From the NCBI GenBank assembly GCA_965644265.1, contig OZ286468.1:49910001-49974000 (forward strand): a stretch of DNA of 64,000 nt. Direction: 5' to 3'. The notes beneath the pieces are model-generated. The model was given only the letters and a program-made list of their open reading frames with translations. It made no database searches and was not told where the DNA came from. The translations under genes and the position numbers were made by a program. Below, in pieces: positions 32,708 through 62,330 of the stretch. This DNA is from Glycera tridactyla. Taxonomy: Eukaryota. Each line of letters begins with the position of its first letter. Position 1 is the first letter of the stretch.

Positions 32708-32850
32708 CTATAAGAGGTAATTATGGCGCGGAGGTGTTTCCACAGACAAGTCAACCGCCCAATCAGCTACACGCTGAATCCCGTAACATCCAATGGTATC
32801 CAACAACCAGTCTTTCGCCACAACTGTCACGTTATAGGTGCGATTGATTT
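32708..32850 (-). CDS. BRCA1: BRCA1 last exon, end of BRCT2 (INRTYNVTVVAKDWLLDTIGCY...NYLL*)
   Basis: Acceptor tttgttacag, phase 1, VVxxxWLLD motif equivalent to human VVTREWVLD; TAG at 32708. Confidence 0.92.
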
Positions 32851-38800: not shown

Positions 38801-41800
38801 CTGTGTTGAAGTAGCAAAACTTCCTTTAACTTTCTTCACTTTCTGTTCCGCTTTGTCACTCTCCTTTCCCCGCTTCCGTTTACCAGACAAGCTTCTCTTT
38901 TCGGTCTCAGTGTCAATTTCTTGGCTTGCGAGAGGTGAAAGCGTAGGAGTCATCTTATACTTTTTGAGGACATTCAACGCCGCGGCTAATTCATTCGGAA
39001 GCTGTACCTGCGATGCAGATTTGGCCCCTCTTGAACTGACATCTGTTGGTGGTGATGGGGACCTTGGGCTCTGTGCAAATGGGATTTCAGTCTCACTCTC
39101 ATTCAACGTCATATCTCCAGCTTTACGTTTCCTCAATGACCTGCTCTGTCTCCCAGTGACCACGTCACATTCTTCCGGCGATTTCTTCGTCTCTTCTTTT
39201 TGAGATCTCCCTCTACGCCTCCCAGATGTACCTGATGTATTTGACTGGTTTTGCTGACGTGCACGACTAAGCCTTCTCGACGATAACAAATGCAGTGTAG
39301 AGTTGTTATCATTGGAGTTGGGAATCATGTCAGAGTCCTCAGCATCCGAGCCTTCATCTGGAATGGGCATCTCTGAATCACCTTCCTCATCCGCGTTGCC
39401 ATCATCAACTATTGCTGCTGCTACCTCCTCATCTTCATTTGCTCCATCTTCATCCTTTCCTATCTCCTCATCTTCATCTTTATCATCATCTGGTTTTGCA
39501 GAATCTTCAGCTTCATCATCTTTGTTTACATCAATATCAGGCAGATCAGCATCATCCTCATCTTCATCATTTGGCTGCATAGGTAGAGCATCTTGGACCG
39601 GGCGTGTCACTGTAGGTTTCTTGGCACTCAGTTTGGCTTCCAGTGCAGCAATCTCTTTCATGATGTTGCCAACATCATCTTTCAAGTCATCACCATACTG
39701 AAATCATTAAATCAACAGATGCCATAAATGACTACAATGATGAGAGTGACCCCTACGACCAATTTCTCGAAGCGCTCTTTGTGACAGAGTCAAATATAAC
39801 TCTGATGAGACCTTCTCTATTGATAGAATTATTTTAGGCCACATCAATGATGGTCTCTAATAACAGAATTCACTGTATGAAATCAGGCCAAAATCCTTTT
39901 CAGCAAATACTACCATATATTTGAGGATCCAGTCAATTTCATTCATTAGAAATTCAAAATTCCATCCAAGAGATCTAAGTTTAAAGATAAGTAAGGGAAC
40001 CAGTGTACACTGTAGTTGAGCAAGACACAGTCATTTAGTTGTGTCATATCTGGGTTGAAAGTCACAGAACATCTGCCAAATATTTTGTAGCAAATTTGGC
40101 TGAGATTACAATTTTATCTTAAGCCACAGATTACCGATTTTAGCCAGAACTTTTATTAGTGTGACATACATATATTCTTCACATACAGTTGAACCTCTCT
40201 ATGAAGACCCCCTTCGGTTGCATACAAAAATGGTCTTTATGGGGAGGTGGTCTTGAGAGGTCATTTACTGTTGAAAATAATACCACTGTGAACGCTCAGG
40301 CTGGCCTTTATAGAAAGGTGGTCTTTAGAGGAGGTTTGACTGTGATCCAAAACTTCACCCATTTGGAATCTGTGATTGAAGCACACTTTCAAGGCCGTAA
40401 AGCTCCAACATCAGGCTTCCAAACCAGAATATTGATGGATAAAGATGCAGTGCGTAGATGAGACTAATATTGAGAGGAATGGGCGACAAATATCTCTCGG
40501 CCAGTTTGACTAGAAATGAGTAAATTCCTTTAGCCAGATGGGGAAAGCATTAGCCTATGACTACATATGCTTTCTGGCTAATGGCTAGTGCTGGCCCAGC
40601 ATAGCTTACCTGGGTATCGACTGCTTCACTCATACTGGAGACAGCACTAGAGTTCATCCCACGACTGGAGCTACCATCATCAGCTGCAATAAACAGATGG
40701 TAAGATCACTGAATCAGAACACGATTTTGATTTCTCCCTTGTGTTAAAAAGATGGTTGATGAATAAATAGATAATTAAATAAGATGAAATGAATAATCAG
40801 TGTCACCCGAGGCAGGATTCAGGGTTCTATATTGTGGACTGCCCCATGGCACAGACACTCTGACAGGCAATATTTATGTATTAGGGCAGGTGAATTGTTG
40901 AGAGTACCAGCCCAATGGGCACGTCCATAAGCATGATTTAGCCTATGATTTGTGAAGGAGAGTAGGCAGAAATGATGAAGGCAGGTGAAATTCCGTGCCC
41001 ACCTGCCCATAGAGCACTGGGGTAGCCAACTTTTGGCGACCGGAATTAGTGATGATGCTGCAGATTTCCATGAGTAATGATGACAGTATTCGCAATGATT
41101 GAAAACGAGATTTTGAATTTCTTGGAGTAATGATACACGTAGAATGCAAAATAATTGCTTGGAAAAGAGTAATCATTATTCCAAAATGGTTGCATCTCTG
41201 CCTGAAGATCTGAATGTGAATAAGACATATGATTTGATGCCCTATCTCAGGATTTCCAGAATCCTGGGTATTCTGCCCCGAGGTTTGAGACAAAGAGGCC
41301 ATTCTTCACTAAATACTTCAAAATGGGTTCACTAAATGTGAAATAATGAGGGAGTATAACAGATCCAGGCTGCTAAAGAGGGGCCACACTTGTGTAAATT
41401 GTGTAAAATGCCCATGCAACCATCTGGATGTACACCAGTTTAGGTACAAATCTAAGTAATATAGTCCAGATCCATTGTCAAATCCGCCAAGAGCAATATC
41501 ATGCAATAGATGCGGAAGATCTAGCTCAAAAACATATCCATTACTCCTAAATTGTGATGATTGGCTACTAATACCAATAACAGAATCAATGTTGAAATTC
41601 TCCACATGGAACTTATCCCCCGCTCTTCTGTGCCCAGGGATGTGATTGGCTAACAACCAAAAAACACTGAAAACCTGACCAGGAGCACTTAAACCACAAA
41701 TTTGTCAATCAACAAACCCAAACAACTGGTGACTGGAGGCTACTGGAACTCCATACAAACATCGTGCTCTATCTTCACTGATACTGGCCCGATTTTCATG

Positions 41801-44800
41801 ATCTAAAAGCCAAAATAATCAGTAGAGAATGTTTGTATTCTGAGAGCAAAAAGACGGAAATCCGCGGATCTGTGCAGGGTTGCATCCAGGATTTTCCGAA
41901 TTGGGGGCATTTGCCCCCTAATGTTCAAGAAAAGGGGGCATTTTTCACAAAAATGTGTTTGCTTGATATGGAGTAAGTGCAAGCTTTTTGCTCATTCAGG
42001 GGGCATTGTGGCCCCTAATTTCTCTGAAAAGAGGCCACCACTCAACAAAACGTGTGAAATGCCCCCATGCCCCCCTCTGGATGCAACCCTGTCTGTGGAA
42101 CAATCACATCCCTGTGTGCCTTTACTTTTGATACCAATCTGTAATTTCTGACGATAATAATTACGGTACACTCACATTCTTCATCTGAGTCATGAATGAT
42201 TGGTTTTCTTGGTCTCCCATAGATGTCATAATCGTCTTCCTCATCATCACTGCCTTTAGCAGAAGCTGTGGTGATCACAGTTGAATCCTTCGAACCTAAG
42301 CATTTCTCACCCTGCTCACCCCGACTGTCCTCATCTGTGAATGCAAAAGACCATATGCTACAAACACTGTTCAATACTGCATCAAACCAATTCACAAATG
42401 AACTGAAAACTATCAGTAAAGACGAAATTATTTTTCATGAAACGATCAAATTTACGGAAGGTACTGCTCATACATTTCCAAATGAACCTCATTCAGTGAA
42501 AATTTCACGGAATGTGAAATGATTAGATGAAACTATGTTTCACAATACAGGTTCAAATCCACAAGAAATCAGATGATTTTTGAAAATGTAATTTGTACAT
42601 TTCAATGGTGTATGTTTCATAAAAGCTCATTTCTTTTGAGAGTACAGCATTATTTACATTTATTTCTTCTGAAACTAGGATAAATTCCTGAATAGGGGCA
42701 TAATTCCCCTGTGTGAACAAAGAATACCTAGTGCCACTAGGAGGGCAAAAATCATCCAGTAAAAATTCAACTATGATGCATTCCTCGTCCTGACTGGGAT
42801 AGCCTTCAAAACATGGAAAAAGCTAGGAGTGGAAACATGCTCCTGCCCATGCATGTAAAATGAGTTTGAAATTGTCAAATTGATTTTGGATTTCCGGTTT
42901 TTGTGACTGAAGCCTGAGAAACCTGGAACATTCAAAGGATGACAAACACAAGCAGGAACTGTTCACTGCACCATGAAATAACAGGCCTGCCTGACGAGAG
43001 TGAATCACATAGATCTTTTATGTAGCTTGTCTTAAAAAGATTTGATAGGAGGTACAGATATGAAAAATATAAAGCTTGCCAGGGCCCATAAAATTATATG
43101 AGAGCCAGTTCATCTCAATCCAAATTCAAATAGAATATTGACAAGTTGACAACTGCCGATGGTCAGTGAACAAATCTCGAAATCTCACCCTTCCCGGTAT
43201 TTTAAACCAGATGAAACAATGAGTCACATTATGGTGGGATTTTATGTTAATCCTGATCACTGAGTACTCCAATGAACCACACCTGACAAAATGTATCACT
43301 ATCTTTGACCTCACAGAATCAAGACCCCATTTTGAAAATATGGAGAAATTTCCACACCATTTTCGCTTGCACTCTCAATTGAGCCTTTCACTCTGACAGC
43401 TGCTCTTAATATGAAACTCTTAGTTTTTTCTATAATCAAGTTTGTCATAATCTCTCATGAATGGTGACATGGAGCTTGCTTAAGTACTCAAAGCTGGCCT
43501 GCAATTAGATACTAATTGGCATCAATATATGCACAAAAAATTCAAACATCAAAATCGGCATTAATTGGCATTAAAATCAATGGAAAAAAGTCAATTTAGA
43601 ATCTCCAATCAAGGAAAAAAGGCAAAACATCAGTGAATTAGATTAACTGGTGAATGTTTAACTTCAAATTATTATATCAAGAAACAGGATAAGAAAGCAG
43701 GCCTGTCATAACACATGATGAAATGCACAGTTCCTCACCTGAGTCATCCAGATTGATGGGATGAGCTTTATCTCCCTCATCAATGTAGCCATCCTCATCA
43801 CCAGCAGCATCCCTGCTCTCCTCCTCATCATGTGCTTGCTTCCTCTTCCTTGAGGCCTCCTCTTCTTGGTCTTCTTCTGTTGTGAATATACTCTTATCAA
43901 GAGAATCAATGAGATATGGCGACGATGACTCATGAATACGTCGATATCTCCGAGATACAACTGATGACTCATGTTGTTTCCTTGACTTATGACTCTCCGA
44001 AGATGCTTGCGATGATTCACGACTTTTCTGCGAGCTGTGCTCTGGAGACAGTGGCATTATTCCTGAAATTTCTAACTCGCCACCAATCAAACTTTCGCTA
44101 TGAGCCGACTGCATCGATGATTCGATGACAGATATCTGAGAATCTCTCTGGCTTCTTCGAAGAGAAGTACTCTTAGCTTTTGAGCTTTGACTGCTTTGGC
44201 TACCTTTCTGGGAGCAAATGCTCATATGAGTCTTCAATCTGGCATGAGTCTGGCTTCCCAAAGTAGGAGATTGACCTTTGATACTTTGACTAAGTCTCTG
44301 AGAATTCAATGGCGCATGCGGAATTTTGAACATATTCTGCTGTCTGGCACACTGTGACTGAGACAATAGCTGTGACTGGCTCATAGATTTCATAGTTGGT
44401 GGAGTGGGTGGCACAACATCTGTATCATCCTCTTCCTCCTCCTCCTCCTCCTCCTCTTCTTCTTCTTCTTCTTCTTCTTCTTCTTCTTCTTCCCCCTCTT
44501 CCTCCTCTCCATCATCTTTGTCTTTATTATCATTAGCTTCCAAGTCACCATCATTATCAAGATTTATCACTCTAATATCATTAACATCAACTGTATCATC
44601 TGATCCTCTTGATATGGGCCTAGTTGCTACGGTGAAATTGGACAAAATTCTCGAATTTGCGGTTGATACACCACCTCCATGTTTACTGTCCAGAATAAGT
44701 GTTTCATCTGATGTACTAGTCCGAATCTGGCTAAAATTGTTCTGTGACTGACTGCAGTCATCATCGTCATCATTATAATCATCAGGTAGGACCGAGTCCA

Positions 44801-47800
44801 TACATTCCAAGGTGCGTGCTATGCGTGAATCGGCCAGATTTTCTCGGTCTTCCTCATCCTCGGAATCTGATTCCTCAGTGAGAGTGTTCACCATCTCCGA
44901 GTCCTGCGAATGCACTGATTCTGCATCTTCATCATCTTGACCCACAATCTCTGTGGTACATATCGTGGCTGAACGAGAGTCAGCAGTCGTATCTTCAGCA
45001 CTGCATGCAGTAACAGTCTCGTGCACATCATGGCAATCATCATCGTTACTCAACCGACGAGATAACGGTGTACGCTGCTTCACTGGTATTGAAGACTCAC
45101 TGAACTCAACTGATTCCTGACACATGCTTGATACAGGTTCATTGTTTCTATTCGACATAGTATTTTTTTCTACACCAACATCTTCAGTACTGTGCAGATC
45201 TGAATGACTTCTTTCGACATCATGAACATCCTTGGCTTCAGGATCATCACCCTGACTTGCTGATGCCTCCCCCCCGATAGCATATTCATTACCATAACTA
45301 CCAGCTGCATCTTCAGAATTAATCAAGTCTATCGTAATGTTGCTGTTCTTCGGTTTAGTTGCTGATGGTGTCAAACTGTACAATAACTGAGTTGATTTTG
45401 GTGCAGTTCTAGCTGATTTTGGAGCAGGTGATAATAGAGATTGTGACTCCATTTCCGAGTTCAAATCCTGCATGGAATTCAAGCCATTGTTATCCTCTTG
45501 TGGTATCCCATATTGAGACACCGGCCGATGAAGATGGGCAGCGAACGGCGAATGTGAAGCCAACCCACGTACTGTTCTACGTGATCTTCTCTTCCTACTT
45601 GAATCACTCTCAGATTCTGAATCACTTGTATCTTCATTAGATCTGTTCTTTGTATCGATACCTTTTGGGCTTTTGGTTTTAGGACCTATTTTTCTTCTTT
45701 TCGAAGGATCAGTTTTCTGCCTAGGAGAAAGTTTGTGATCTATCCCACAAAGCTCCCCATTTGCAACTGGATCTCTCTCATAATCGGAATCTGTTGCTTT
45801 GGCAAGTTTCTCTCTGCTTCTAAGAGATTTTTTCCTTTGGCTGTCACCAATTTGTGTGGTTAATTGTTCACACGTTTCGGAACTATCAACAGACTGTGAT
45901 CGACGAGTTTTGCTACGTCTTATGGAAGACGCTGAATCTCCTTCAATCTCATTACGTTTCAATTGAGAACTGTCAGGTTTACTTCCTGTTGAGTCATCAA
46001 TTATTTCATATGACTGGCTACGCTGACTTTTGGATCGGGTCGTCCGCCTTGGGGCCTTTCTTTTCTTGGCTGATTCTGAAAGGATATCTCGCAGCTCCTG
46101 TTGAATGTTCTCATCTATTGTATCATTGTCTTCTACTCTATCTTGTAGCTCGGAATTTGCAATTTGCTCTGCTTCCTGCACAGATGACGGTGTAGTATCG
46201 AGGGAGATGACAGGCGTACCACGGATTGGTAATGATGCACCACCCATTACATCGATTGTGGCTGCAGCAGCTGCTGCTACAGATTGTCCCACATTCCCGC
46301 TTACAGCACCATCCTGCTCAGTTTTAGACGAAGATTCCACCAGCTGACTATCCACCAGTCGAAAACTTCTCCGCAACGGTTTTGACGCATTTCGCTTCCT
46401 CTTGTGCACATCTTCATTTTGTAGAGTACTGCTGATCGGGGGTTGACTGTCTAGATCACATGTCTCTTCCTGTCTGATGTTATCCACTTCCCTATTCTGA
46501 CTAGCAGCAAACGCTGATGAATCCTGGCCAATCTGATTTTTTATCTCCAAATTTTGTGGATCGACAGAATCTGGGATACAAACAACAGAAGATCCTGAGG
46601 AGTCTTTGATTGAAATTACACTTCCTTGACTGGAGCTTTGAGATCTTCGTCTCATTACAGATTTAGGAATCTGATCGTGAATGGATTCTGTAGCTGGAGT
46701 GTGTAGTTTTGAAGTCAAACTGTCTGCCACACGATCACACTGACTCAACACAACCTGACACTCCTTCAGGGCACAGCCGATACTATTTGACTCTGAATAT
46801 AAAGCAGTCTCGGCAGAAGGGGCGCTGTCTTCATATGTTGCTGGAACAAGCACTTTCAATGCAGATTTCGTACAAGGCTCTTTGAATTCCACGTCACATC
46901 CAGTAGTGGCAACACTAATCTTGGCATCACCTAAAGGAGTGCCGCATTCACTATCAAATAGCTGTGAGCTCTTTTTGCTTCCATTTCTAATGGCACTTCC
47001 ATCATTGGTGAGCTGGGAACTTTCGGCAGCTCTTACGGCAGCATTTTTGGCAGATCTCCGCTCAACCACAGTATCAATGCCCATATTTTCACTTGGAAAC
47101 AACTGTGAGCTTTTATCGAGTTCTCTCTTTGCCCGAACCCCCTCTGAAGTTTTTACTTGAGAGTTCTTACAGGCTCTATTTTTCGTTGTGGTACATTCAT
47201 GAGTGAACAGTTCTGAGCTTTTATCATGTGTGTCAGGAATCATTTCATTTCCATTCAGTATTTGTGAGTGCTTCTTGACTTCATCAATTACTGTACTTTC
47301 AACAGGCTGCCTATCTCGAGGACACCTATTCACCTCTTTCCCTGCCATCTTGTCACTATTCAATGCTAGCTGCGCTTCTTCATTTACTATTTCTACGTCT
47401 TCTAGCAGTTCAGTATCTGCTTTTTGCACACCATCATCAAATCTTGTGGGTGACCTCAACTGACTATCGGATAATCTTTCGAGAACAACCTCTGCTTTCG
47501 TCATTTTTGCAAGCCCATCATCTACTTTGGCGGGATGCTGTCTCTCCTTTGATCTAGTCTTTCGTGATGGTGCCGGACTCGTGTCTGGTATCATGACCGT
47601 ACTCTGGGAGCTAAAGTCGGACAGACCAGCATCATCTGGCCCAACATCGACGGAAAAAGCGCCACTTTTCTGGCTCCTGTGCTCATTCACATCATCATCT
47701 GCATTGTGATTTTTCTCCCTCTCGAGCTGTTTTGCCTGTTGCAATGAATTCCGACCAGACCTCTGTTTCCTGAGCTTTGGCGATCTATTATTTTCATTTA

Positions 47801-50800
47801 CCTCCGTAGGTGGTATCATGCTGTTCAGATTGCCTTCTCTCGTTATAGAACCTACACCGATTTCAGTACTGAACAAACTAACACTATCTTGCACATTTTC
47901 ATCAGTCTTGGTCTTCTCAAGTTTATGTCTTTGAAGCTGCTCAAGTTTTGATTTGTCATTTGAAATAGATACGTGGTCTGTAGGTGGGATCATGATGTTC
48001 GAATCAGTACTTCTATTGTGCAGCCCACTCTTCTGCTTTCTGAGTTTACCACGATTTGATTGACCAGGAGCAGGGTGTGTATTCTCGGTTGGAGGGATGA
48101 CCCCAGTGAGATCACTGATAGTACCAGCTATATTTATCGAAGCAGATGGTGAAGAATCTATTTTCGCTTCTTGTGTGTTCTGCTGCTGCTGTTGCTGTTG
48201 AGATGATATATCAATACGGTCTTGCATGTTACGACCAATGCTAGCATAATTCTCCTGTGATCCCTTGCCATCTGCAGTCTTACATTCGACTCCGTTACCT
48301 TCATCAGTCTCAGCATCCGGCTGATTCGGAGTGTTTCCCTCTGATTTTGACATCACATGTTCCTGACTGATATGACCAGATGAATTGAGCTGCTCCTCCC
48401 CATCCTCGACGGAATCAGCAATCAATCTCACCTCGTTATCATCCATGCCTTCATCATCACAAACAATTACAGGATCGTTAAAAGTTTCCGAATGAGACCG
48501 TATTCGTTCTTTCCTCGATACTCTATCCGCTTTCGAAGCTGGTCCTCCTGACAATTTCAGTGGGTCCAAACGATCAGCGGACATTATACTGTGCTCAGTT
48601 TGCCCTGAAGATTCAAACTCAAAATCACCCATGCAAGGCTGGAATTCACCAGTGCACAGCATCTCAGGCTCCTTCACATCGACTGTCTCAGGCACATAAA
48701 CTTCAGAATTATTCAAAGTATCGATCCGAGTTTCTGGAATCTTGTCAACACCATTAGAGTATAAACTTGTTGTGAATTCTCCGGTGCATTGAATGGGCTC
48801 CTCTGTATCATCCACTGTGATTAGATCATCTCTGTATTTCTCAAACAACTTGGCAATCATCCCACTTGCTGCGGCGGCTGTTGATCTGCAGCCTGATATG
48901 ATCTCACTACTCTTATCTTTCGATTTATTCTGAGAAGTGTCCAATGTTGATGTATCAATCCTCTCATCGACTGGCTCCACATGGTCTGTAGATGTCTCAT
49001 GGCTCTGTAGAATTTGTGCCGATGCTGATACTGAAGGAGGTCCTGTCTCTTGTATGGTCGTAAGAGATGGTGTGCTGGATGAAGAATCAATTGATTTCAC
49101 TGAATATTGTGACAAATCCTTCCCAGTATCTTCTTTCTGTCTGCCAAACTCCTGTGTCCCTGGTCCATCCACATTTTCGTGTTCTCTACACTCGTGATTG
49201 TCCATTGTTGATTCTGGCACACAACTCACTGACACGATCCCATCTGAAAGAAATCCAGAAATATACGATCACAAAGTGCACTATCATTAATTCAAGCATG
49301 AAGATTTCTATTATTATATCTGTCATAGACTGCCTTCAATGAAGTTTACATTTCAATCTGAAATAATCAGTAATGTGAGAGAGCAGCAAAAACTCCTGGA
49401 AATGAGGGAGCAATGAATACAGCCACATCCCCTTTGTACTCCCAAAAGTTGCATATTTGAGCAGCTAGCACCCAATCCACAACACTATAAATATTTCATG
49501 TCTTTCTGAAATCAGTGAATTTCCTGAGAACTTGCTCCATAGAACTTTATATTGTAGTGAATCCACTCTTTGCCTGATAGCAAAGACCTTACATGATAGT
49601 CATTTCAAAATCAGGCTTTTATCAAGCCACATGTTCTTGAGCCACTCCAGCTACAACTTATTGGTGTCGCCAAGGGTGAAACATACCTGACACCGAATAC
49701 ACAAATCATGATTGCACGCTCTGGGATTCTTGAGAGTTCAAGCCGTTTCCTACACATGAAGGATATCGGTCAGTAAGCTTCTCATAATATCCCTCATGCA
49801 GGGATAATTTTACGATGTGCTCTGCGGCAAATGGCACATATAGTTGTGAATGGGCACATTAAACCATATTATATCTTGTGCCCAGAAGGCACATGGAATT
49901 TTCCATACTTTGATATGATTACATGGTTTGAAGCACACACAAAACTGAAATGGCACATGAAATCTGCATCAATGTGCCCGAAAGACCCATACATATTCCC
50001 GAGAAAGAAAATCCCTGCTCATGTCTTGACACATGTATTCTCTTGTACCATGAAATTGATGATGAAGTATCAACACAATGAGATGTGCTGCTCATTCACA
50101 GCAGTTCCATCAATATAGCCATATATTTTTGTCACAAGGTAAAGTCAAACTTGTCTATAAAGAATGCTATCAGTCGCATCAAACAGTGGCCTTTATAGGT
50201 AGGTGGTCTTTATAGAGAGGTCATTCACTGTTTATTGTCAAAAAACGACGGTCACAGCTCAGGGTGGTCTTTACAGAGAGATGGTCTTTAGAGCAAGTAG
50301 CCCACTATAGCAGAGCTCCAGGTTTTTGGTGAGGTGAGGGGGTACTGGTAGCTGATGGACTTCATGGGACATATCTCAAGATGATGGGAAATTTCCTATT
50401 TATCTCTCATGAGGTAGAAAAACTGAGCGCCACTGACCCATAGGAGATATTGGTGGGCCAGTGGAAATAAGGGTCAAGTGCCTGGGCCCACCATGAATCT
50501 GCGCTACAATTTGCCATGTCTAAATGTGATGGTAATGCCTCACATGCTTAGATCGCATAGGTGCCAACTAGGGCTGGGACGAAACACTTTGGTCACGATA
50601 CAAAACATTTCTAGAAACACACCTCATGAAATGAATGACGAAACGAAATGCCATACAACCCTCTTTCAGGAGCCGGGCATGATCCTCCCGGTTGCCAATC
50701 ACATAAGCAAGCCTACCAAATTAGGGTTGGCCTTGAAATATTGCTAATTACTATAGAATATAAAGACATTTCTAGTAAAAAGTTCATCAAATCTCCATCA

Positions 50801-53800: not shown

Positions 53801-56800
53801 CAATAAAATTAAGTGATATACAGTGAAACCTGCAACGAGAGACCGCCTTAAATGTAACCAAAAGGCGGTCTCTCAAAAGAGGGGGTCTCTCATCAGAGGT
53901 ATATTTGATTAGGTCAGATAGAAAAGTTGCTCTGGAAGAGCGGTCTCCCGTCGGAGATGTTCTCTTGTGAGGGGTCTCTCATCGCAGATTTCATTTTGAC
54001 GTTATTGTTTTAGTTTGTTTTGAAGGACAGTAAAACCTGTATTCAGAATTAATAGATGAATAATCAATGAACTGACCTTGAATGTCACTGTCTTGACTTC
54101 GATCAGTAATGTGGCACTCTTCATCTTCCTCCGTCCACTTCTCCGAGGTGATGATTTCATCTGTGGAAGCCACTTTCCGGGATCTCACTTTCCGTCTCTT
54201 CACTTTCTCGATGTCCAGCGACTGTTTCCTGCTGTTCGTGACAAGGTCAAGCTGCATCTCTTCTGTCACCTTCCACTCCTGTTGTGGGTCAATATTTCTT
54301 GGATTCTTTTTATCGAGCCCATGTAATACTTTTTCTTTATCTGGTAACACTAGCAATTTCTTGCCTTTCTTCCTTCCAACTTGTGTATTTTTCATATTCT
54401 GTTCACTATTTTGGGATGTCACCTCAGTTTGATTACTCATACTGTCATTCCTCTGCAAAGTTCTTGACTTTGCACTTTTAGATTGCAACTTTGATTGTGC
54501 TTTTTCTCTAACATTCACCACTTTGCTGTCTTCTTCATAGTGCATTTCCGCTCCTGAGATTACTGGAACCTGACTGTCGTGTGTTCCTCTAGTACTCGCT
54601 CTTGGGTTACGATCGTTGCCACGCTGCCTAGTTTCCATTCTCCTGAATGGTGGGACATCTTCCATGATCTGCTCTCTTGCTTCTACTTCCATGTCCCGCA
54701 CTTGCTGACTGAACACAAATTCAAATTCTTCAGCTTCCGCAAAGTGAGCGGACATGGTATCAATTTCTTGTTGTGTTAGAGATATTTCAGCATCAGCTCC
54801 CACAGTATTCTCCTGTTCATGACCAGGAGGCACATCTTCAACCAAATCGACAGTTTCTGTGGGAAGCGTAAAATTTCCCTGAGATATGTCCGTAACTTCA
54901 AGTGTTTCATTACTTTCATCGATCTCAATGACAGGTTCAAGAATTCTCGACCCATTCTTTCCACTTATCTGTGAAGTATTCACTGAAGTGCTTTCATCAC
55001 TTTCTACCTCATAACTGCGGTCAAATACTTTGATTTTACGCTTCCTTCCTCCTTTGCGTCCTTTCTTCTTGGGTGTTCTTTGACTGGGTTTGAAAGCAAA
55101 TGGATCTTCTTCAGAGGGTGAACCTATCATGCTGCGCCTCATTTTGGCACCTTTCGGAGTTTTAACCAGTCTGCCTTTGTATTTCAGCAACATTCTCCTC
55201 TTCAGTGGCGTCTTCTGAACCCTTTTGTTGATGGTAGATGGGGCAATCATATCTTCTTCCGAAGTTGGGCCTTTCACAGAATCAGACGACAAATTGAAGA
55301 CACTCATATCCGGAGTTGGTCCTTTGACACTCACAGATGGAGGACTCCTGTTTTTGATCAAACCCACTTTTTTGTATTTCAAATTTTTGTTTCTGTTCAG
55401 TCCTAATTTAGTTTTGGTGAGTAAGAATTTTGCTCTACTTAGTGATTTTCTGACCTGGGTAGAAGTTTCTGGTTCACTCTCCTTCTGGCATGTAGGACCT
55501 ATGATTGAATCAGAGGAGATATTCACCCGGGGAGCTCTATGTGTCGAATCTTGCCCAGATTCACCTTGACAGTGAGTAGCATCAGTGTCTTGCACAGAAT
55601 AAAGTTCATGTGATACATCAACTGCAGGAGCTGGACTCTGGATCTGGGGAGATATTTCCTTGTCTGGATTACCAGTCACACCAACAGGTTCTCTTACACC
55701 CAGTTCGACCTCAGAGACCGAATCATCAATGTTATCTACCTTCCGTGTATTCCTCAAAGGTCTTTTCTTTTTTCTATTTTCATGCACTGTTTTCTTTTGG
55801 GTGGCAGATACATTTTCATTTTTTCCATCACCAATAATCTCAGCAGTTGGCGTCGCACTTACAGAACCACCAGGCTGACTGGGAGCAACAGCAGGTTTGG
55901 TTTTAGGCTGCTTTCCTGACGGGATCTCAGCATCTGGGTGCTTTGGAACAATTTTCTCGACAACAACATGCAACTTTTGTACGGTGTCCAGCGATACATA
56001 TTCGAGCATTCCTACAGGCTCGGTGCTGAATGGTTGGGAGCATGCAGCAAGGCTCCTTTGTGAGAGCAGCTCGTCTTCGCCAGGTAAGACTGGTATTTGA
56101 TTAGTACTTGGGATATGATCATTATCGGTACCTCCGGACACGCCCATCTGTTCTAACGGAGTCTCATCAACAAGATTCACATCATCCCCATTTTTTTTTC
56201 CAGTCATTGCCGGATCCCCAATAACACGATCATCAACCATTATTTCCTTATTCTCAACATCCTGTACTCTTCCTGCAGTTTCAGAAACTACATTCTCATC
56301 GGTGTCCACTAGAATTATGTTATCACGAGGATGAGGATCGATCGTCTTTCTCTTTTTGTTCTCACCCGTTTGCTTTTTGGGCTGATGCTGCTTTAGGTAG
56401 GATTTATACTGCGATGGTTGTGGGTCATCAGCAACATCTATATCGCATGACTGATGCCCTACATTGGTTTCTGTCTGATCTATGGTACATGTCATCTGTT
56501 GCCCGTTTTTCTCAACCACTCCCTGCAGATACTCATCACTATCATCCACCCAAACAAACTGACCAGGTTTCGGCAATCGTTGCATCTTTCTCAGACCATC
56601 TTCTGGAATTTTCTTCTCTACATGCTTTTTCCATGTGCCTTTCGATCCTTTTTTGGAGTACTGTTTTCCAAAGACTTTATCAACAAGTGCCTCTCTTTTG
56701 TGAATGACTGGAGTTTTGAAAAGTATACCACCGCTACTTTCTGGTGTTTTTCGAACATCTGAATGTTTCTGTGTTGATGAAGTTTCTTCCTCCATTAGTC

Positions 56801-58823
56801 TATTCTTGCTTCGTGTCCGCCTGCCACCTCTGTTCTGTGGAGGACTTACTGGAATCTCTTCATGTCCAGCAGAATGCGTGTCAATTTGGTGACTTGGATT
56901 GTCACCCGCCTCAGAATTATCTGATGGAATTTCACAATCGAGAGGTACTTTATTGTTTTCACATCTATCTTCACACTTTTCACTCTCCTCATCACTGTCA
57001 TCCATATCATCTGCACTATATGTCTTCCGTTTCCCCATCCTAACCCTTGTCTTGGATAGAACTTTCGGACGAACATTGATTCCTTTCATTTTCTGGGGAA
57101 GTATCTTCGTTTCTTGAAGACGCTTTGTGCAGTCTTCCTTTGCCTTTTGGATATAGTTTGTGCAATCTAAGATAATACTGTCAAGTTCAGCATCATTCAA
57201 AACAGGCATTTCATCTATTTCTTCACACTCGATATTGTATACTTTATCTTGTGGGTGTCGAATTTGACTCGGAGGTGTGAGACTGGTACCATCGGTGCCA
57301 AGTGTTGATGCCGAGCTTGCCAAATGCAGAGATTCAGGGCCAAGTGTCGAGGGAGTGCGAGCCTCCTGCAGCCAGCTCTGAACCTTGGTATGAGCCTTCA
57401 CCCTCGGAAGAATTTCAATCCCATCCACAGGCTCCTTCTCCACCAAATTATTCCCACCTTCTACGTAGTCCACACATTCAGCTACTCTGGTATTCTCCTT
57501 GTCTTCTTGAGATGCATTTCTCACGCGGCTGGTCCTATTCTGATGTTTCCCAATATTCGGTGCCACAATGACAGTCGTCTCAATTTTCTTTCTTGTCGTT
57601 TGTGGGATAGACTTTCTCTCTCTGTCATGACCATGATGTCCGGACTTTGCAGGAATGCCATTTTGCACTTGCCGATGTGTTTTGGAATGTTCAAGGTTAG
57701 CTGATATGTGATGTTCACCAGTTTGTCCTCCACCATCCTCACTAATCCTACGCCCCGACTTTGGATGCTTACCTTTCTTCTCTCTTAGTTCTGCATTCGG
57801 GAACGAGGAGCTGAAAATCAAATTGGTAGAATTATTGTCAGAGAATTTGGCTTGGATTGGTGGGAGTTTCATGACAGGATTATGTATGCTGTATGTTTCT
57901 ATGACAGCTGGATGTTGTCCTCTGCATGCATCACTCATAAACCCTAAACACAAGATAATGGGGATCTGCCCCCTAAAACATCAGGAAAAAGGGCATTCTT
58001 CCACAAAATCAATTGAATATGGGTTTGCACTGAAATTTCCCAAGACGCGGTTGTTCCTTACAGAGGTTGGATGGAAAACATCCTGATTTTGCAGAGTAGA
58101 ATCACTCACAAACTGCCTGTTTCATGCAACTTTTCAACAACTTTCGAAGGTATCATTTTCAAGGCCCTGCCAACAATGGGTGAAAAGGTAATATATAATT
58201 CACTATTATGGTAATCCGATACCACATTGATTAATCCAATAAAACTTTGTCCATAATACAGTGAAACCTGCGACAAGAGACCTCCCCATGAGAGACCACC
58301 TCTGACGGGAGACCACTTTTCCAGGGCAGCTTTTCTATTTGACGCAGTCAAATATACCTCTGACGAGAGACCACCTCTTTTGAGAGACCGCTTTTCGGTG
58401 GCATATAGGGCGGTCTCTCATCGCAGGTTTCACTGTAATAATGATAATCAGATATGTCAAATTCCATACTTTTTCCAGACAAAAATGGCATTTCACAAGA
58501 TTCCATAATTTTTCCACGCATAGCTGCATCCAGGATTTTTCAAAATGGGGCCAATTGGCCCCCTCCTCACTCAGAAGGGGGCCAATGGTTGTCAAAAAGG
58601 GGCCAATATCACCGAGCACCTGAACTGCCTAAAATCACTATGCTGAAAAGGAAAAAGGTCCAACTTCAGGCATCCCACCTTCGCACAATTCAGTGGCACT
58701 ATCCCCATTCCCAGTGGCATCAGTTACAAGCCCTCTTCCAGGCTCCTTGCCCTTGGGCATTTCTTCACCATTCTGGCTGGAATTGGAATTCTTGAAGAAG
58801 CAAGTGATTCTTCTCTGGGCCAT
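32708..58823 (-). CDS. BRCA1: BRCA1 orthologue, spliced model from Met 58823, ~3,992 aa. Minus-strand join: 58679-58823, 54077-57790, 53508-53603, 43739-49243, 42176-42334, 40610-40683, 38292-39697, 37218-37467, 36386-36473, 35788-35918, 34683-34815, 33973-34107, 32708-32850. May extend 5' via 60417-60471, 60940-61012, 61446-61510 and beyond the window
   Basis: Exons sum to 11,979 nt with consistent phases. Tandem BRCT (TTSG, [31 protein letters not shown]), coiled coil DTQ|YGDDLKDDVGNIMKEIAALEAKL, KVQSW and DKVFGKQYSKK, resembling human KVNEW and DKIFGKTYRKK (recalled human sequence). Confidence 0.9.
32956..33180. mobile_element. hAT-like MITE, 15-bp TIR CAGGGTTGCATCCAG, 6-bp TSD
   Basis: TSD tatacc on both sides; sister copies 41875-42091 (TSD tctgtg), 28110-28310 (TSD tctatc), degenerate 53068-53449. 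Confidence 0.85.
33973..34107 (-). CDS. BRCA1: BRCA1 BRCT2 exon (EIHGLVQMCGASIIQEP...)
   Basis: Acceptor gtttgcag, donor gtaagt, phase 1-1; matches human WMVQLCGAS. Confidence 0.92.
34683..34815 (-). CDS. BRCA1: BRCA1 BRCT linker/BRCT2 exon (EDYEMAGDSV...[14 protein letters not shown])
   Basis: Acceptor catgtatcag, donor gtaaga, phase 0-1; matches human DFEVRGD...LEICCYGPF. Confidence 0.93.
35788..35918 (-). CDS. BRCA1: BRCA1 BRCT1 exon ([26 protein letters not shown]...)
   Basis: Acceptor aatttcag, donor gtgagt, phase 1-0; matches human [23 protein letters not shown]. Confidence 0.95.
36386..36473 (-). CDS. BRCA1: BRCA1 BRCT1 exon (VRVAQFAEMLGCRVVPRFNPSITHVIVPP)
   Basis: Acceptor ttttcatttcag, donor gtaaga, phase 0-1; BRCT THVI motif. 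Confidence 0.93.
37218..37467 (-). CDS. BRCA1: BRCA1 exon with start of BRCT1 (...PKRPNWLFTTSGIKSGKVK)
   Basis: Tandem cagcag acceptor, donor gtgagg, phase 2-0; SG of the phosphate pocket. Confidence 0.9.
37879..38053. mobile_element. Tc1/mariner-pogo-like MITE (CAGTGAAACCTG TIR, TA TSD)
   Basis: TA-cagtgaaacc...ttcactg-TA; relatives at 31922-32006, 52407-52618, 53119-53277, 53821-53995, 58259-58435, 59665-59841, 59906-60055 and 62779-62955. Confidence 0.85.
38292..39697 (-). CDS. BRCA1: BRCA1 exon with PALB2-type coiled coil followed by an acidic/Ser-Pro region
   Basis: Acceptor atgatttcag, donor gtgagt, phase 0-2; overlaps track ORF 38288..39685. Confidence 0.92.
40610..40683 (-). CDS. 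BRCA1: BRCA1 small exon (DDGSSSRGMNSSAVSSMSEAVDTQ)
   Basis: Acceptor tgtttattgcag, donor gtaagc, phase 1-0; ends in TQ like the human exon preceding the coiled coil. Confidence 0.85.
42176..42334 (-). CDS. BRCA1: BRCA1 exon (EDSRGEQGEKC...IHDSDEE)
   Basis: Acceptor tttgcattcacag, donor gtgagt, phase 1-1. Confidence 0.85.
43739..49243 (-). CDS. BRCA1: BRCA1 giant exon B (5,505 nt), Ser/Gln/acidic low-complexity with SQ clusters, poly-Q and poly-E
   Basis: Acceptor atttctttcag at 49243, donor gtgagg at 43739, phase 1-1; overlaps track ORF 43677..49235. Confidence 0.92.
51853..52047. mobile_element. hAT-like MITE, perfect 15-bp TIR CAGGGCTCTACGTTG, 5-bp TSD
   Basis: TSD ggagg at 51848-51852 and 52048-52052. 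Confidence 0.85.
53508..53603 (-). CDS. BRCA1: BRCA1 exon (SQRWLVRKYADSDEESDSGQNTKLLNDSFSI)
   Basis: Acceptor ttgttttcag, donor gtacac, phase 1-1. Confidence 0.75.
54077..57790 (-). CDS. BRCA1: BRCA1 giant exon A (3,714 nt) with KVQSW and DKVFGKQY motifs and basic NLS-like clusters
   Basis: Acceptor ctcgttcccgaatgcag (phase 1; an alternative cag at 57811 gives phase 2), donor gtcagt; overlaps track ORF 53991..57953. Confidence 0.9.
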
Positions 58824-58824
58824 T
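58679..58824 (-). CDS. BRCA1: BRCA1 exon beginning (R)MAQRRITCFFK, PIP-box-like
   Basis: Acceptor tctgtgacag|A-ATG, donor ag|gtggga; phase 1 joins giant exon A. The donor is only moderately strong. Confidence 0.65.
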
Positions 58825-58899
58825 CTGTCACAGACACACTTTTTCAGCCAATCATGGATCGTTGACACAAAGAGTAGAGCAAAGAATAGTATTCACCGA

Positions 58900-59390
58900 A
58901 TGACATTCACACTTCACGCTCGATTCACCATGCTCAACTCTCGACACGAGGCGCAGAAAACCGCGAACCCCATTCCAACTGACCGTCACTAGTCGCTATT
59001 TGGCCATTAGAAATACGATCGCGAGAAACCGGGTTATCGGGTATGGGGTATCAGAAACTGCGAGAACGCTTTTGCATCGCGGCCGCTGATTGGCCGAGAG
59101 CTGCCAGTTTCGATTCCATTGGCCAATCAGAATCGAGATTACAGCAGGGCTTCGTCTCCGAACGCAGCCGGGCGATATTAGAGGAATCGCCAAAATGGCG
59201 ATCTTTCTTCTCGTTTCTCCATGATAAATACCAATGATACAGGTTTCTGGCGCGGCCCATCGCTCAATTTGCGTGAGTTTTTCTATATTCGCGTATGGCT
59301 TGGCGCCCCAGCCTTCCGATTTCGCGCCCAGTTGTCATTTATTCGCGTAAATCCCGCACTCCCGCGGCCTGGATGCAGCTCTGTCCACGC
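58900..59390 (-). promoter_or_regulatory. CpG-rich promoter-like module P2
   Basis: GATCGCGAGA 59017, CCAAT/ATTGG boxes at 59089, 59118 and 59123, CAAAATGGCG (YY1-like) 59191, TTTCGCGC (E2F) 59320; CpG density far above the window background. Confidence 0.7.
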
Positions 59391-60416
59391 CTGGAAAATT
59401 GAATTGAATTGAATTGAAAAACTTTATTTTGTTTCATCACATATCGATGGCTCAGCGCAATACTAGGCTAACTCCCTTCTTTGTCCATAGTGAGTTAGCC
59501 TAGTATTGCTTTGAGTCATCGATATACAATATGATTACCCAAGGATGGGGCTTTTCTGGTGTGGACGAATGCTATAACTAAATAAAAACAAATCAATGTA
59601 AATCTTTGAACAAAATTCTATGCTTTTTCCAGGATCCCAGGCTGGCTAGGACCACAAAGTGATACAGTAAAACCTGTCTTGGGAGACCGCCCCAAATGCC
59701 AACAAAAAGCGGTCTCTCAAGACAGGTGGTCTCCCATTGGAGGTATATTCGAATACGCCAAATAGAGAAGAGCCGATAAAGAGTGGTCTCTCATTAGAGG
59801 GTGGTCTCCCAAAAGAGGGGCTCCCAAGACAGATTTCACTGTACTTTAATTGTGCACTTTCAGTGAGTTATGACTAATCAGCCCCTTCTGTCACATTTTA
59901 AGGTACAATAAAACCTGTCTTGGGAGACTGCCCCAAATGCCAACGAAAAGTGGTCTCTCAAGACAGGTGGTCTCTCATTGGTATATTTGACTATAGAGAA
60001 GAGCCAATAAAGAGCAGTCTCCCATTAGAGGGGTCTCTCAAGACAGGTTTCACTGTACATGCTCAACCTGAGTGACGTTGCAGCGAACATTCATCTCAAG
60101 GCCCTCTCAGCTTTGATGCTGCTAAAATTGTTGACCTTACATGGACTTTTCAAGTCAGTCATTTTCAAGGACTTTTCAAGGCCAAGGGTCAACCCTGTTG
60201 GCCTGAAAAGTGTGGTCACTACTCCAAAATCATATCCAGATAGATTCATGGGTGACTGCCATGAGGTGAAGGCGATTATACCATTCACTTCAAACTTGAA
60301 TATGGTTTCCTTGAAACTCCATGATTTTTGGCAGATGACATGTTTGATACAAAACTGCATATTTGTTTGATATTTTCTTCACAAGTTCCCATTTATAGAG
60401 CTGGAATATAACATAC

Positions 60417-61659: not shown

Positions 61660-62330
61660 AGCAGACCCAGGGATAGTGATCGACCCCGGCCTCGCGCCAT
61701 TGTCGCATCAAACGAACGAAACCCGCGCGTTTTTTGCAGCGTGCGCCCACCGTGGCGCATTAAAATCACACAATCTGGCATGGAAACGTCTAAAACTCAC
61801 TGAAACTGGCGAAAATCCGGACCAAATCGATCAATTTGGTGATATTTCGGGGTTAAAAGAGATGTTTATTCCAATTCATCTTCGAAAATTTCAAGATGGC
61901 GCCCAAATCCCGCGCGAACTCTCGCGATCGCGAGAGTATGATGAGATTTCGGCCGGTCTAGTTCACGGACCATCCGTTAGATGTCAAATTTGTCGGTGCG
62001 CCACACTCCGCCATCTGACGGCTCGGACGGGAACCAGACTAACCAGGCACGTGATCAGCCCAAAATGGCGGGATGCTCTCGAATGCTTATACCTGATGAA
62101 TGTTTTCATCACGTTTATGGCGAAAACATCGTGCTTTCCTCAAAAACGAACATGGATTACGCAAATAGGATCACTTTTCGCGCATTTTGTACAGTCTACT
62201 GACACCCGGCTGTATTTTTAGCATCTCGATAGCGATCGAAAATCGTGAGAAACATCGTTCAAACATAACTGATTTGGGCACATAGAATCGCCGACAGGCG
62301 CATCAAACGTCACCTTGGGCGCACAAATTT
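61660..62330 (-). promoter_or_regulatory. CpG-rich promoter-like module P1 with candidate non-coding exon ending at 61801
   Basis: 20-bp palindrome 61918-61937, YY1-like motifs at 61892 and 62061, E-box CACGTG 62048, TTTCGCGC 62176, minus-strand donor ca|gtgagt at 61801. Confidence 0.65.

What the first reader, a model, noticed from the sequence alone, without database searches (positions are those of the whole stretch)
58794..58824. Canonical PCNA-binding PIP box at a potential BRCA1 N-terminus
Seen: M-A-Q-R-R-I-T-C-F-F-K is an exact Q-x-x-[ILM]-x-x-F-F match, followed by a basic residue, and starts at the first in-frame Met downstream of both promoter modules. Known: DNA ligase I begins with the same type of N-terminal PIP (MQRSIMSFF), and I know of no canonical PIP in vertebrate BRCA1. 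Inference: direct tethering of this BRCA1 to the replication clamp, possibly replacing RING/BARD1-based chromatin recruitment.
Basis: partly seen in the sequence, partly recalled or inferred. Interest (0 to 1): 0.72.

Follow-up and report, generated by a model that had tools for sequence, protein, structure and literature searches.

The report
PIP-box start of BRCA1-like gene
A textbook PCNA-clamp-binding motif sits at the first start codon of a very large BRCA1-like gene in an annelid-like animal, and the exon looks coding and splices in frame, but no RNA, relative or binding evidence could be obtained, so it is a good lead and not a result.

Summary
The motif is real.

In favour:
- The 48-codon exon ends at donor AAG|GT (58679/58678, phase 1).
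- Exon 2 then joins exon 3 (54077>49243) in frame. My four-exon model gives 3174 residues without a stop.
- Downstream exons carry a coiled-coil-like stretch and BRCT pieces whose best solved-structure matches are human BRCA1.
- Exon 1 has the codon usage of the giant exons. None of 1500 stop-free non-coding windows scores as high.
- It holds the only PIP-type match in this phenylalanine-poor protein (chance within the first six residues about 1e-4).

Against or untested:
- The public contigs run unspliced through the donor.
- No run that holds the exon is on record as RNA.
- No homologue of exon 1, 2 or 3 was found, so conservation could not be tested.
- A closer AG at 57811 would break the frame.
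- A RING-like C-x-H-x2-C-x2-C mini-exon (49728-49687) lies in intron 2, so "RING-less" holds at most for this long form.

Verdict: a plausible N-terminal PIP box on a BRCA1-like protein, probability about 0.4. It is not a PIP degron.

The parts
58794..58823 (-). Met1 plus PIP-type motif M-A-Q-R-R-I-T-C-F-F (Q3, I6, F9, F10). Lys11 follows at 58793-58791.
   Evidence: Read directly. It is the only PIP-type match in the 3174-residue model. Start context gacagaATGg.
58679..58823 (-). Coding part of proposed exon 1: 48 codons plus 1 base, donor GAAG|GTGGGA, phase 1.
   Evidence: Codon-usage score is +7.4 bits (+7.2 when trained without exon 2). None of 1500 stop-free non-coding windows reaches it, and it matches the first windows of exon 2.
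57791..58678 (-). Proposed intron 1 (888 bases), largely repeats. It contains a competing out-of-frame AG at 57812-57811 and a possible branch point ttgAt at 57818.
   Evidence: repeat copy 58258-58435; 58525-58562 matches two other places in the window. The ORF stretch 57980-57837 scores as non-coding, -16.3 bits.
54077..57790 (-). Giant exon 2 (about 1238 codons), polar and presumably disordered. It ends at consensus donor CAAG|GTCAGT, phase 1, 28 codons before the ORF's stop.
   Evidence: No Pfam family above its cut-off. No homologue.
43739..49243 (-). Giant exon 3 (about 1835 codons). Acceptor tttcag|A at 49244/49243 (phase 1), donor CAG|GTGAGG at 43739/43738 (phase 1).
   Evidence: in frame with exon 2, no stop. 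No homologue.
42176..42334 (-). Exon 4, acidic (DEDSRGEQ...DSDEE). Acceptor cacag|A, donor T|GTGAGT, phase 1 at both ends.
40610..40683 (-). Candidate exon 5 (DDGSSSRGMNSSAVSSMSEAVDTQ). It bridges phase 1 to phase 0. Donor cag|GTAAGC.
   Evidence: It is the only candidate there with a consensus GTAAG donor in the right phases.
38292..39697 (-). Exon 6, with a coiled-coil-like stretch NIMKEIAALEAKLSAKK followed by acidic and Ser/Pro-rich sequence.
   Evidence: The coiled-coil reading is by eye only.
32711..37475 (-). C-terminal tandem BRCT region in at least six exons. The open-frame limits are 37475-37194, 36587-36342, 35934-35767, 34842-34606, 34117-33944 and 32923-32711. These are frame limits, not exact exon borders.
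   Evidence: translations. (best solved-structure matches are human BRCA1 BRCT). (Pfam BRCT in two pieces, one above and one just below the gathering score).
58824..59400 (-). Presumed 5'UTR and CpG-island promoter. Two CCAAT boxes lie at about 59123 and 59094, with a TCTCGCGA-like element at about 59020. Five upstream ATGs lie at 59007-58855.
   Evidence: sequence. (CpG observed/expected 1.2-1.4 against 0.53 for the whole window). (upstream ATGs).
49687..49728 (-). RING-like mini-exon in intron 2: caag|NPRACNHDLCIRCQ|GTATGT, 42 bases, phase 0 at both ends.
   Evidence: By dinucleotide shuffles, chance is 0.04 in the whole intron and 0.003 in its last 520 bases.
49814..49859 (-). ATG-led stretch MCPFTTICAICRRAH with donor C|GTAAAA, 85 bases above the mini-exon but one base out of frame with it.
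   Evidence: The joined peptide's only solved-structure matches are the TRIM2 RING, and they are not significant (E 2.7). No Pfam RING family matched.

Best explanation
Bases 58823-58679 (minus strand) are the first coding exon of a long transcript of a very large BRCA1-like gene. The transcript would start from the CpG-island promoter at about 59.0-59.3 kb.

The exon splices 58679>57790 into a 3.7 kb exon, which splices 54077>49243 into a 5.5 kb exon. The transcript then continues through a coiled-coil-like exon to a BRCA1-type tandem BRCT.

The protein would begin M-A-Q-R-R-I-T-C-F-F-K, a canonical PIP box at the extreme N-terminus of a polar, presumably disordered region. The inferred mechanism is the usual one for such motifs. 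Gln3 and the Ile6/Phe9/Phe10 plug would dock on PCNA under its interdomain connecting loop, so this form of the protein would be tethered to loaded clamps at replication or repair-synthesis sites.

Shown here: the sequence, the frames, the coding character of the exon and the BRCA1-type C-terminus. Inferred: transcription, splicing, use of this ATG and PCNA binding.
For: - Motif and start context.
- In-frame phase-1 junctions 58679>57790, 54077>49243 and 43739>42334, giving 3174 residues without a stop.
- The exon 2 donor is a consensus CAAG|GTCAGT only 28 codons before the ORF's stop.
- No AATAAA or ATTAAA follows on this strand for 2.4 kb, and no CpG island lies between exons 2 and 3. Exons 1-2 therefore belong with the BRCA1-like body.
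- Exon 1 scores +7.4 bits by codon usage in the proposed frame and -3.6 and -19.6 bits in the other two. Stop-free non-coding windows average -16.5 (sd 8.9), and 0 of 1500 reach its score. Coding windows average 13.5 (sd 6.9).
- With training that leaves exon 2 out, exon 1 scores 7.2 and the first exon 2 windows 5.9-9.4. The ORF stretch above the acceptor scores -16.3.
- It is the only PIP-type match in the protein. Residue shuffles give P = 0.003 for the strict motif anywhere and 1e-4 for a canonical motif within the first six residues.
- The sequence meets the signature Q-x-x-psi-x-x-theta-theta and carries the Thr at position 5 that raises PCNA affinity in Cdt1 (PMC3973308).
- BRCA1-type BRCT exons.
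- Contigs from two studies cover the motif, and no difference from the window is listed inside it.
Against: - No spliced product was seen. Contigs of runs X2 and X6 run on from exon 1 through the donor to 58659, and no 58679>57790 joint was among those listed.
- None of the runs that hold exon 1 is on record as RNA.
- No homologue of exon 1, exon 2 or exon 3 exists in the protein collections searched, so the motif's conservation is untested.
- An AG at 57812-57811, preceded by a T-rich stretch (ttgattttcag), lies 20 bases above the proposed acceptor. It would shift the frame into a stop after 8 codons.
- Up to five upstream ATGs lie in the likely 5'UTR.
- The alternative allele in X2 and X6 differs by two amino-acid changes and a 6-base deletion within 145 bases. 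That speaks for weak constraint on the rest of the exon.
- A weak acceptor tgtgacag|A directly before the ATG is in frame with a candidate upstream exon ending at 60417. The motif could therefore be internal rather than N-terminal.
- Across thousands of genes, a few N-terminal PIP look-alikes are expected by chance.
Confidence: 0.4

Rival explanations
1. Exon 1 is not part of the mature coding sequence. The ORF is a chance open frame or an upstream ORF in a 5'UTR or promoter-proximal region. The BRCA1-like protein starts elsewhere: at the RING-like exons near 49.86-49.69 kb, at an exon outside the window, or at an internal Met.
For: - Contigs are unspliced across the donor, and none of the holding runs is on record as RNA.
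- A competing AG at 57811, preceded by a T-rich stretch, breaks the frame.
- Five upstream ATGs.
- A RING-like C-x-H-x2-C-x2-C mini-exon with consensus splice sites, and an ATG-led C-x2-C stretch, lie just above exon 3, where a canonical BRCA1 start would be expected.
- Six-frame counts of the motif are near chance.
Against: - Exon 1 has clear coding-type codon usage in exactly this frame.
- It is in frame with a 3174-residue ORF.
- The RING-like pieces cannot be joined in frame by canonical splicing. R1 and R2 are one base out of frame, and the candidate third piece (~49484-49394) has a weak acceptor and weak donors.
- They match no RING family in Pfam.
- Exon 2 has no in-frame Met for about 250 codons after its acceptor, so it needs an upstream start.
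Confidence: 0.28
2. Exon 1 is real and coding, but the motif does not bind PCNA in a useful way. It would be a chance short linear motif in a fast-evolving polar protein, possibly internal if upstream exons at 61.5-60.4 kb feed into the acceptor at 58825/58824.
For: - The rest of the exon varies freely between alleles (M22V, V33A and a two-residue deletion).
- Exons 2 and 3 have no detectable relatives, so the protein evolves fast.
- The candidate upstream exon ending at 60417 is in frame with an acceptor directly before the ATG, and the upstream mini-exons score as coding.
Against: - Two adjacent Phe in a protein with 1.3% Phe, in full register with Q and I, at residues 3-10, is unlikely by chance (P about 1e-4).
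- No difference from the window is listed inside the motif in contigs from two studies.
- The position and flanks (RR inside, Thr at position 5, Lys after) resemble working N-terminal PIP boxes (PMC3973308; my recollection of ligase I and Cdt1).
Confidence: 0.15
3. Exons 1 and 2 form a separate orphan gene encoding a polar protein of about 1314 residues with an N-terminal PIP box. It lies upstream of a conventional BRCA1 whose RING exons start near 49.86 kb.
For: - The exon 2 ORF has its own stop at 53993-53991.
- RING-like pieces with an ATG lie between exon 2 and exon 3.
- Exon 2 has no similarity to any BRCA1 or to anything else.
Against: - A consensus donor lies 28 codons before that stop, in frame with the exon 3 acceptor.
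- There is no polyadenylation hexamer for 2.4 kb after the stop.
- There is no CpG island before exon 3, whereas both upstream promoter-like regions (about 59 kb and 62 kb) are CpG islands.
- The RING-like pieces do not assemble in frame.
Confidence: 0.1
4. The motif is a PIP degron. It would dock on chromatin-bound PCNA to recruit CRL4-Cdt2 and destroy the protein in S phase or after damage, rather than to tether it.
For: Thr at motif position 5 and the Q-R-R-[IV]-T core are shared with the Cdt1 degron (signature from PMC3973308; the Cdt1 sequence is from my memory).
Against: The degron signature needs Asp at position 6 and Lys or Arg four residues after the aromatic pair (PMC3973308). Here position 6 is Cys and +4 is Asn14. 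The only nearby basic residue is Lys at +1.
Confidence: 0.04

Closest known systems
N-terminal canonical PIP boxes of replication and repair proteins (DNA ligase I, Cdt1, MSH6, UNG2)
   Same: Q-x-x-[ILV]-x-x-F-F within the first ten residues, directly after the initiator Met, followed by a basic residue and a polar tail. The signature is as defined in PMC3973308. The comparison sequences are from my own knowledge, apart from the ligase I string QRSIMSFF, which occurs in PMC10672205.
   Different: Here the motif is attached to a BRCA1-like protein. I found no canonical PIP box reported for BRCA1 among the titles and abstracts listed by a search of papers holding BRCA1, PIP box and PCNA. Binding is untested.
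PIP degron of CRL4-Cdt2 substrates (Cdt1, p21, Set8)
   Same: The Q-R-R-I-T core and the Thr at position 5, which confers high PCNA affinity (PMC3973308).
   Different: It lacks Asp at position 6 and the basic residue at +4 that define the degron, so it should tether rather than destroy.
Canonical BRCA1 (RING-BARD1 heterodimer, large central exon, coiled coil, tandem BRCT)
   Same: Tandem BRCT exons most similar to human BRCA1, a coiled-coil-like stretch before them, and very large central exons.
   Different: - Two giant exons, for a model protein above 3500 residues.
- No intact RING in the window.
- The long form would start with a PIP box instead.
- In vertebrates, recruitment to post-replicative chromatin runs through BARD1 reading H4K20me0 (PMC6548474), and the RING contributes to damage-site recruitment (10.1101/2021.07.21.452958).
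RNF168 degenerate PIP box
   Same: A double-strand-break response factor brought to replication factories by direct PCNA binding (PMC11602139).
   Different: RNF168's motif is degenerate and internal. This one is canonical and N-terminal, and it sits on a different protein.

Membership tests
Canonical PIP box (PCNA-interacting peptide) | Gln (or Asn) at motif position 1 | tested here: met
   Q3, codon 58817-58815. Signature from PMC3973308.
Canonical PIP box (PCNA-interacting peptide) | Aliphatic residue (M, L, V or I) at position 4 | tested here: met
   I6, codon 58808-58806.
Canonical PIP box (PCNA-interacting peptide) | Two aromatic residues (F or Y) at positions 7 and 8 | tested here: met
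   F9 and F10, 58799-58794.
Canonical PIP box (PCNA-interacting peptide) | Lies in an accessible, disordered segment or terminus of an expressed protein | tested here: inconclusive
   It sits at residues 3-10 of a polar, low-complexity exon with no Pfam domain and coding-type codon usage. Transcription, splicing and use of this ATG were not shown.
Canonical PIP box (PCNA-interacting peptide) | Conserved in orthologues | tested here: inconclusive
   No homologue of exon 1, 2 or 3 was found in any protein search. A degenerate DNA pattern found only unrelated AT-rich contigs.
Canonical PIP box (PCNA-interacting peptide) | Physical binding to PCNA that is lost on mutating the aromatic pair | not testable with these tools
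   Needs ITC or pull-down with the species' PCNA, or a complex prediction. The structure tool takes single chains only.
PIP degron (CRL4-Cdt2 substrates) | Thr-Asp at positions 5-6 | tested here: not met
   Thr7 is present, but position 6 is Cys8 (PMC3973308).
PIP degron (CRL4-Cdt2 substrates) | Lys or Arg four residues after the aromatic pair | tested here: not met
   +4 is Asn14. Only +1 is Lys.
BRCA1 | C-terminal tandem BRCT closest to BRCA1 | tested here: met
   Best solved-structure matches are human BRCA1 BRCT (E 1.9e-6 and 2.1e-4). BARD1 is weaker for one piece and absent for the inter-BRCT piece. Pfam BRCT scored 22.2 and 20.8 bits against a cut-off of 21.3.
BRCA1 | N-terminal C3HC4 RING with flanking helices that pair with BARD1 | tested here: inconclusive
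   No full RING pattern in any frame of the window. A central C-x-H-x2-C-x2-C mini-exon and a C-x2-C stretch lie in intron 2, but they are out of frame with each other, lack the flanking helices and hit no RING family. Sequence above base 64000 was not available.
BRCA1 | Coiled coil (PALB2-binding region) before the BRCTs | tested here: inconclusive
   NIMKEIAALEAKLSAKK at the start of exon 39697-38292 was read by eye. No program or alignment was applied.

The most novel reading that the evidence does not exclude
In this annelid-like lineage the main BRCA1 product has exchanged its RING/BARD1 module for a new 5' extension of about 1290 residues that begins with a canonical PIP box. The ancestral RING exons are left stranded and decaying in intron 2. 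BRCA1 would then be coupled to replication by riding on PCNA directly, instead of through BARD1's reading of new histones.
Probability: 0.18. Interest if true: 0.8.

Novelty: new variant of a known kind. Interest (0 to 1): 0.48.

Why it matters
In vertebrates BRCA1 reaches newly replicated chromatin indirectly. Its RING pairs with BARD1, which reads unmethylated H4K20 and ubiquitylated H2A. A natural BRCA1 that carries a clamp-binding motif at its own N-terminus, and whose long form skips the RING, would be an evolutionary experiment showing a second way to couple homologous recombination to the replication fork. It would also give a simple handle (FF>AA) for testing what replication-coupled recruitment alone achieves. 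If the exon proves not to be spliced in, the finding reduces to a chance motif next to a promoter.

Tried and rejected
- **Public reads.** All four runs are contigs dominated by repeats. No splice joint at the exon was listed. X2 and X6 contigs run through the donor unspliced. The runs may be DNA or open-chromatin libraries. Both CpG islands stand at 10-50 times the depth of their flanks, which I could not explain.
- **Second run search, on exon 1 plus 5'UTR.** Holders in two studies, none on record as RNA.
- **Protein searches.** Exon 2 (the second against 1.84 billion representatives), exon 3 and the exon 1 peptide all returned nothing. No orthologue and no annotated product of this genome was available.
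- **Degenerate DNA pattern for M-x-QRRITCFF in metagenome contigs.** Three AT-rich contigs with a stop right after the motif. Irrelevant.
- **Solved-structure search with the N-terminal 31 residues.** No match.
- **Pfam on exons 1, 2 and 3.** Nothing above cut-off.
- **My first frame count was wrong.** I took the ATG as 58824 and favoured acceptor 57810.
- **In-frame acceptor at 57944/57943.** Rejected, because 57980-57837 scores as non-coding.
- **A helix-plus-C-x2-C stretch at 51531-51409 as RING exon.** Its donor falls inside a repeat copy, and the joined peptide hits nothing.
- **'Twin promoter modules' as copies of one another.** Their alignment shows no evident sequence similarity. Neither has another copy in the window or an Rfam match reaching a family's gathering score.
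- **Housekeeping.** No N stretch was filled, and no contig was taken for human.
Full report
**Observation.** On the minus strand the window reads atg gcc cag aga aga atc act tgc ttc ttc aag. Gln3, Ile6, Phe9 and Phe10 fall at 58817-58794, and Lys11 follows. The start context gacagaATGg is strong.

The frame stays open for 48 codons: MAQRRITCFFKNSNSSQNGEEMPKGKEPGRGLVTDATGNGDSATELCE. It ends at a donor GAAG|GTGGGA at 58679/58678, with one base carried over.

**What the gene is.** Downstream on the same strand lie two enormous open frames, 57980-53994 and 49268-43680, and a 471-codon one at 39703-38291. Below them is a series of short open frames at 37.5-32.7 kb.

- Two of the short pieces, searched against solved structures, hit human BRCA1 BRCT best (E 1.9e-6 and 2.1e-4).
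- BARD1 comes second for one piece and is absent for the piece that covers the stretch between the two BRCT repeats.
- Pfam BRCT matched two pieces, at 22.2 and 20.8 bits against a cut-off of 21.3.
- The 471-codon exon opens with NIMKEIAALEAKLSAKK, a coiled-coil-like stretch at the position where BRCA1 has its PALB2-binding coil. This was read by eye.

The locus is therefore BRCA1-like. I did not check that.

**Gene model.**

- Exon 1 ends in phase 1.
- Exon 2 ends at a consensus donor CAAG|GTCAGT at 54077/54076, also phase 1, only 28 codons before the frame's stop.
- The acceptor tttcag|A at 49244/49243 takes it up in frame.
- Exon 3 ends at CAG|GTGAGG (43739) and exon 4 is 42334-42176.
- These four exons give 3174 residues without a stop.
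- A 74-base exon at 40683-40610 bridges the phases to the coiled-coil exon.

Three observations tie exons 1-2 to the BRCA1-like body rather than to a separate gene:

- There is no AATAAA or ATTAAA on this strand between the exon 2 stop and 51574.
- There is no CpG island between exons 2 and 3. Islands stand at 58.8-59.6 kb and 61.4-62.6 kb.
- The exon 2 donor is well placed and in frame with exon 3.

**Is exon 1 coding?** I scored codon usage against the giant exons.

- Exon 1 scores +7.4 bits in the proposed frame, and -3.6 and -19.6 bits in the other two.
- Stop-free non-coding windows of the same length average -16.5 (sd 8.9), and none of 1500 reaches +7.4.
- True coding windows average 13.5 (sd 6.9), and 18% of them score lower than exon 1.
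- With exon 2 left out of training, exon 1 scores 7.2 and the first exon 2 windows score 5.9-9.4.
- The open frame above the acceptor (57980-57837) scores -16.3.

This favours an exon 2 start near 57790. It argues against a second in-frame acceptor at 57944/57943.

**Is the motif more than chance?**

- In the six-frame translation of the window the strict motif occurs 3 times against 1.45 expected. Met-proximal matches occur 2 times against 0.6 expected. Without context the motif means little.
- Within the modelled protein it is the only match, even to a relaxed pattern. The protein has 1.3% Phe and 1.0% Tyr.
- Residue shuffles give 0.003 for the strict motif anywhere and 1e-4 for a canonical motif starting in the first six residues.
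- The sequence meets the published signature Q/N-x-x-psi-x-x-theta-theta and has the Thr at position 5 that gives Cdt1 its high PCNA affinity.
- It lacks the Asp at position 6 and the basic residue at +4 that define a PIP degron (PMC3973308).

**What could not be shown.**

- Contigs from runs X2 and X6 cover 58902-58659, so they run through the donor unspliced. They carry an allele with M22V, V33A and a 6-base in-frame deletion. No difference from the window is listed inside the motif.
- No 58679>57790 joint was among the joints listed, and many joints were not shown.
- A second run search found five runs from two studies holding 41-73% of the sampled words of exon 1 plus 5'UTR. None is on record as RNA.
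- Exon 2 found no homologue among 1.84 billion representatives or in the word search. The same was true of exon 3 and the exon 1 peptide.
- A degenerate DNA pattern found only unrelated contigs.

**Weak points of the model.**

- An AG at 57812-57811, preceded by a T-rich stretch (ttgattttcag), lies 20 bases above the proposed acceptor. It would shift the frame to a stop after 8 codons.
- That AG could be skipped if the branch point is the ttgAt seven bases before it. This is inference, not evidence.
- Five upstream ATGs between 59007 and 58855 open ORFs of 3-20 codons.
- A weak acceptor tgtgacag|A lies directly before the ATG.
- Candidate mini-exons on the same strand at 61510-61446, 61012-60940 and 60471-60417 score as coding. 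The last one ends in a phase that would read into the ATG in frame. The motif could therefore be internal in some transcript.
- The same mini-exons also join a strong acceptor at 59390, which leads to a stop overlapping AATAAA at 59343. That looks like the end of a small upstream gene, and I favour that reading.

**The RING question.**

- No complete C3HC4 pattern exists in any frame of the window.
- One of only two C-x-H-x2-C-x2-C matches in the window lies on the coding strand in intron 2, 444 bases above exon 3. It reads caag|NPRACNHDLCIRCQ|GTATGT, a 42-base unit with consensus splice sites.
- Dinucleotide shuffles give it a chance of 0.04 in the whole intron and 0.003 in its last 520 bases.
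- Eighty-five bases above it, an ATG opens MCPFTTICAICRRAH with a GTAAAA donor, but one base out of frame with the mini-exon.
- Joined with an X at the break, the only solved-structure matches are the TRIM2 RING, and they are not significant (E 2.7).
- Pfam finds no RING family.
- Candidate third pieces have weak splice sites or lack the last Cys pair.
- Exon 2 cannot enter any of these pieces in frame. It can enter only exon 3.

My reading is that these are either relics of the ancestral RING exons or alternative first exons of a RING-bearing form that the assembly renders imperfectly. Either way, "RING-less" applies at most to the long form. RING exons above base 64000 cannot be excluded.

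**Mechanism proposed.** If the long form is made, its first ten residues would dock on PCNA like the N-terminal PIP boxes of ligase I or Cdt1. They would bring a BRCA1-type coiled coil and BRCT pair to loaded clamps.

- In vertebrates, coupling to new chromatin runs through BARD1 reading H4K20me0 (PMC6548474).
- The RING contributes to recruitment at damage sites (10.1101/2021.07.21.452958).
- RNF168 is a precedent for a break-response factor that binds PCNA directly (PMC11602139).

I put the probability that this exon is used and binds PCNA at about 0.4.

**Verdict.** It is unsupported by RNA, conservation or binding data. If true, this is a new variant of a known kind of motif on an unexpected protein.

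Noticed in passing
window 49687-49859 (minus strand), intron between the two giant exons: RING-like pieces. A 42-base unit encodes NPRACNHDLCIRCQ between caag| and |GTATGT. An ATG-led MCPFTTICAICRRAH lies 85 bases above it, one base out of frame. These could be relics or alternative first exons of the BRCA1 RING.
   Followed up: partly
window 58959-59384 and 61668-62300: Both CpG islands stand at roughly 10-50 times the contig depth of their unique flanks in runs from two studies. In a poly(A) metatranscriptome, a 1196-base contig carries 58959-59384 at 99% identity between unlike flanks. Neither block has another copy in the window or an Rfam match reaching a gathering score. Possible readings are open-chromatin libraries or a dispersed element. 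Unexplained.
   Followed up: partly
window 59339-61510 (minus strand): Candidate small gene between the two CpG islands. Mini-exons lie at 61510-61446, 61012-60940 and 60471-60417, and a last exon from 59390 ends at a TAA (59341-59339) that overlaps AATAAA at 59343. The peptide is Ser/Lys/Glu-rich and scores as coding. A possible start is ATG 61700. No read coverage was seen on the mini-exons.
   Followed up: partly
window 58258-58435, 62778-62955, 59663-60057, 51249-51416, 37627-37781, 40180-40343, 7241-7394: A short interspersed repeat whose copies begin around ACAGTGAAACCTG and contain GAGAGACC-type motifs occurs many times on both strands. It reaches contig depths above 10,000 in the public runs and accounts for most of the spurious joints.
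   Followed up: no
window 58726, 58745-58750, 58760: Runs X2 and X6 share an allele of exon 1 with M22V, V33A and an in-frame 6-base deletion in the KGKE stretch. They also have an insertion of about 120 bases in the intron between 58659 and 58640. M22V removes the only other Met of the exon.
   Followed up: no
window 43739-58679: Exons 2, 3 and 4 all begin and end in phase 1, so each could be skipped or added without breaking the frame. This fits with exon 2 being a lineage-specific addition.
   Followed up: no
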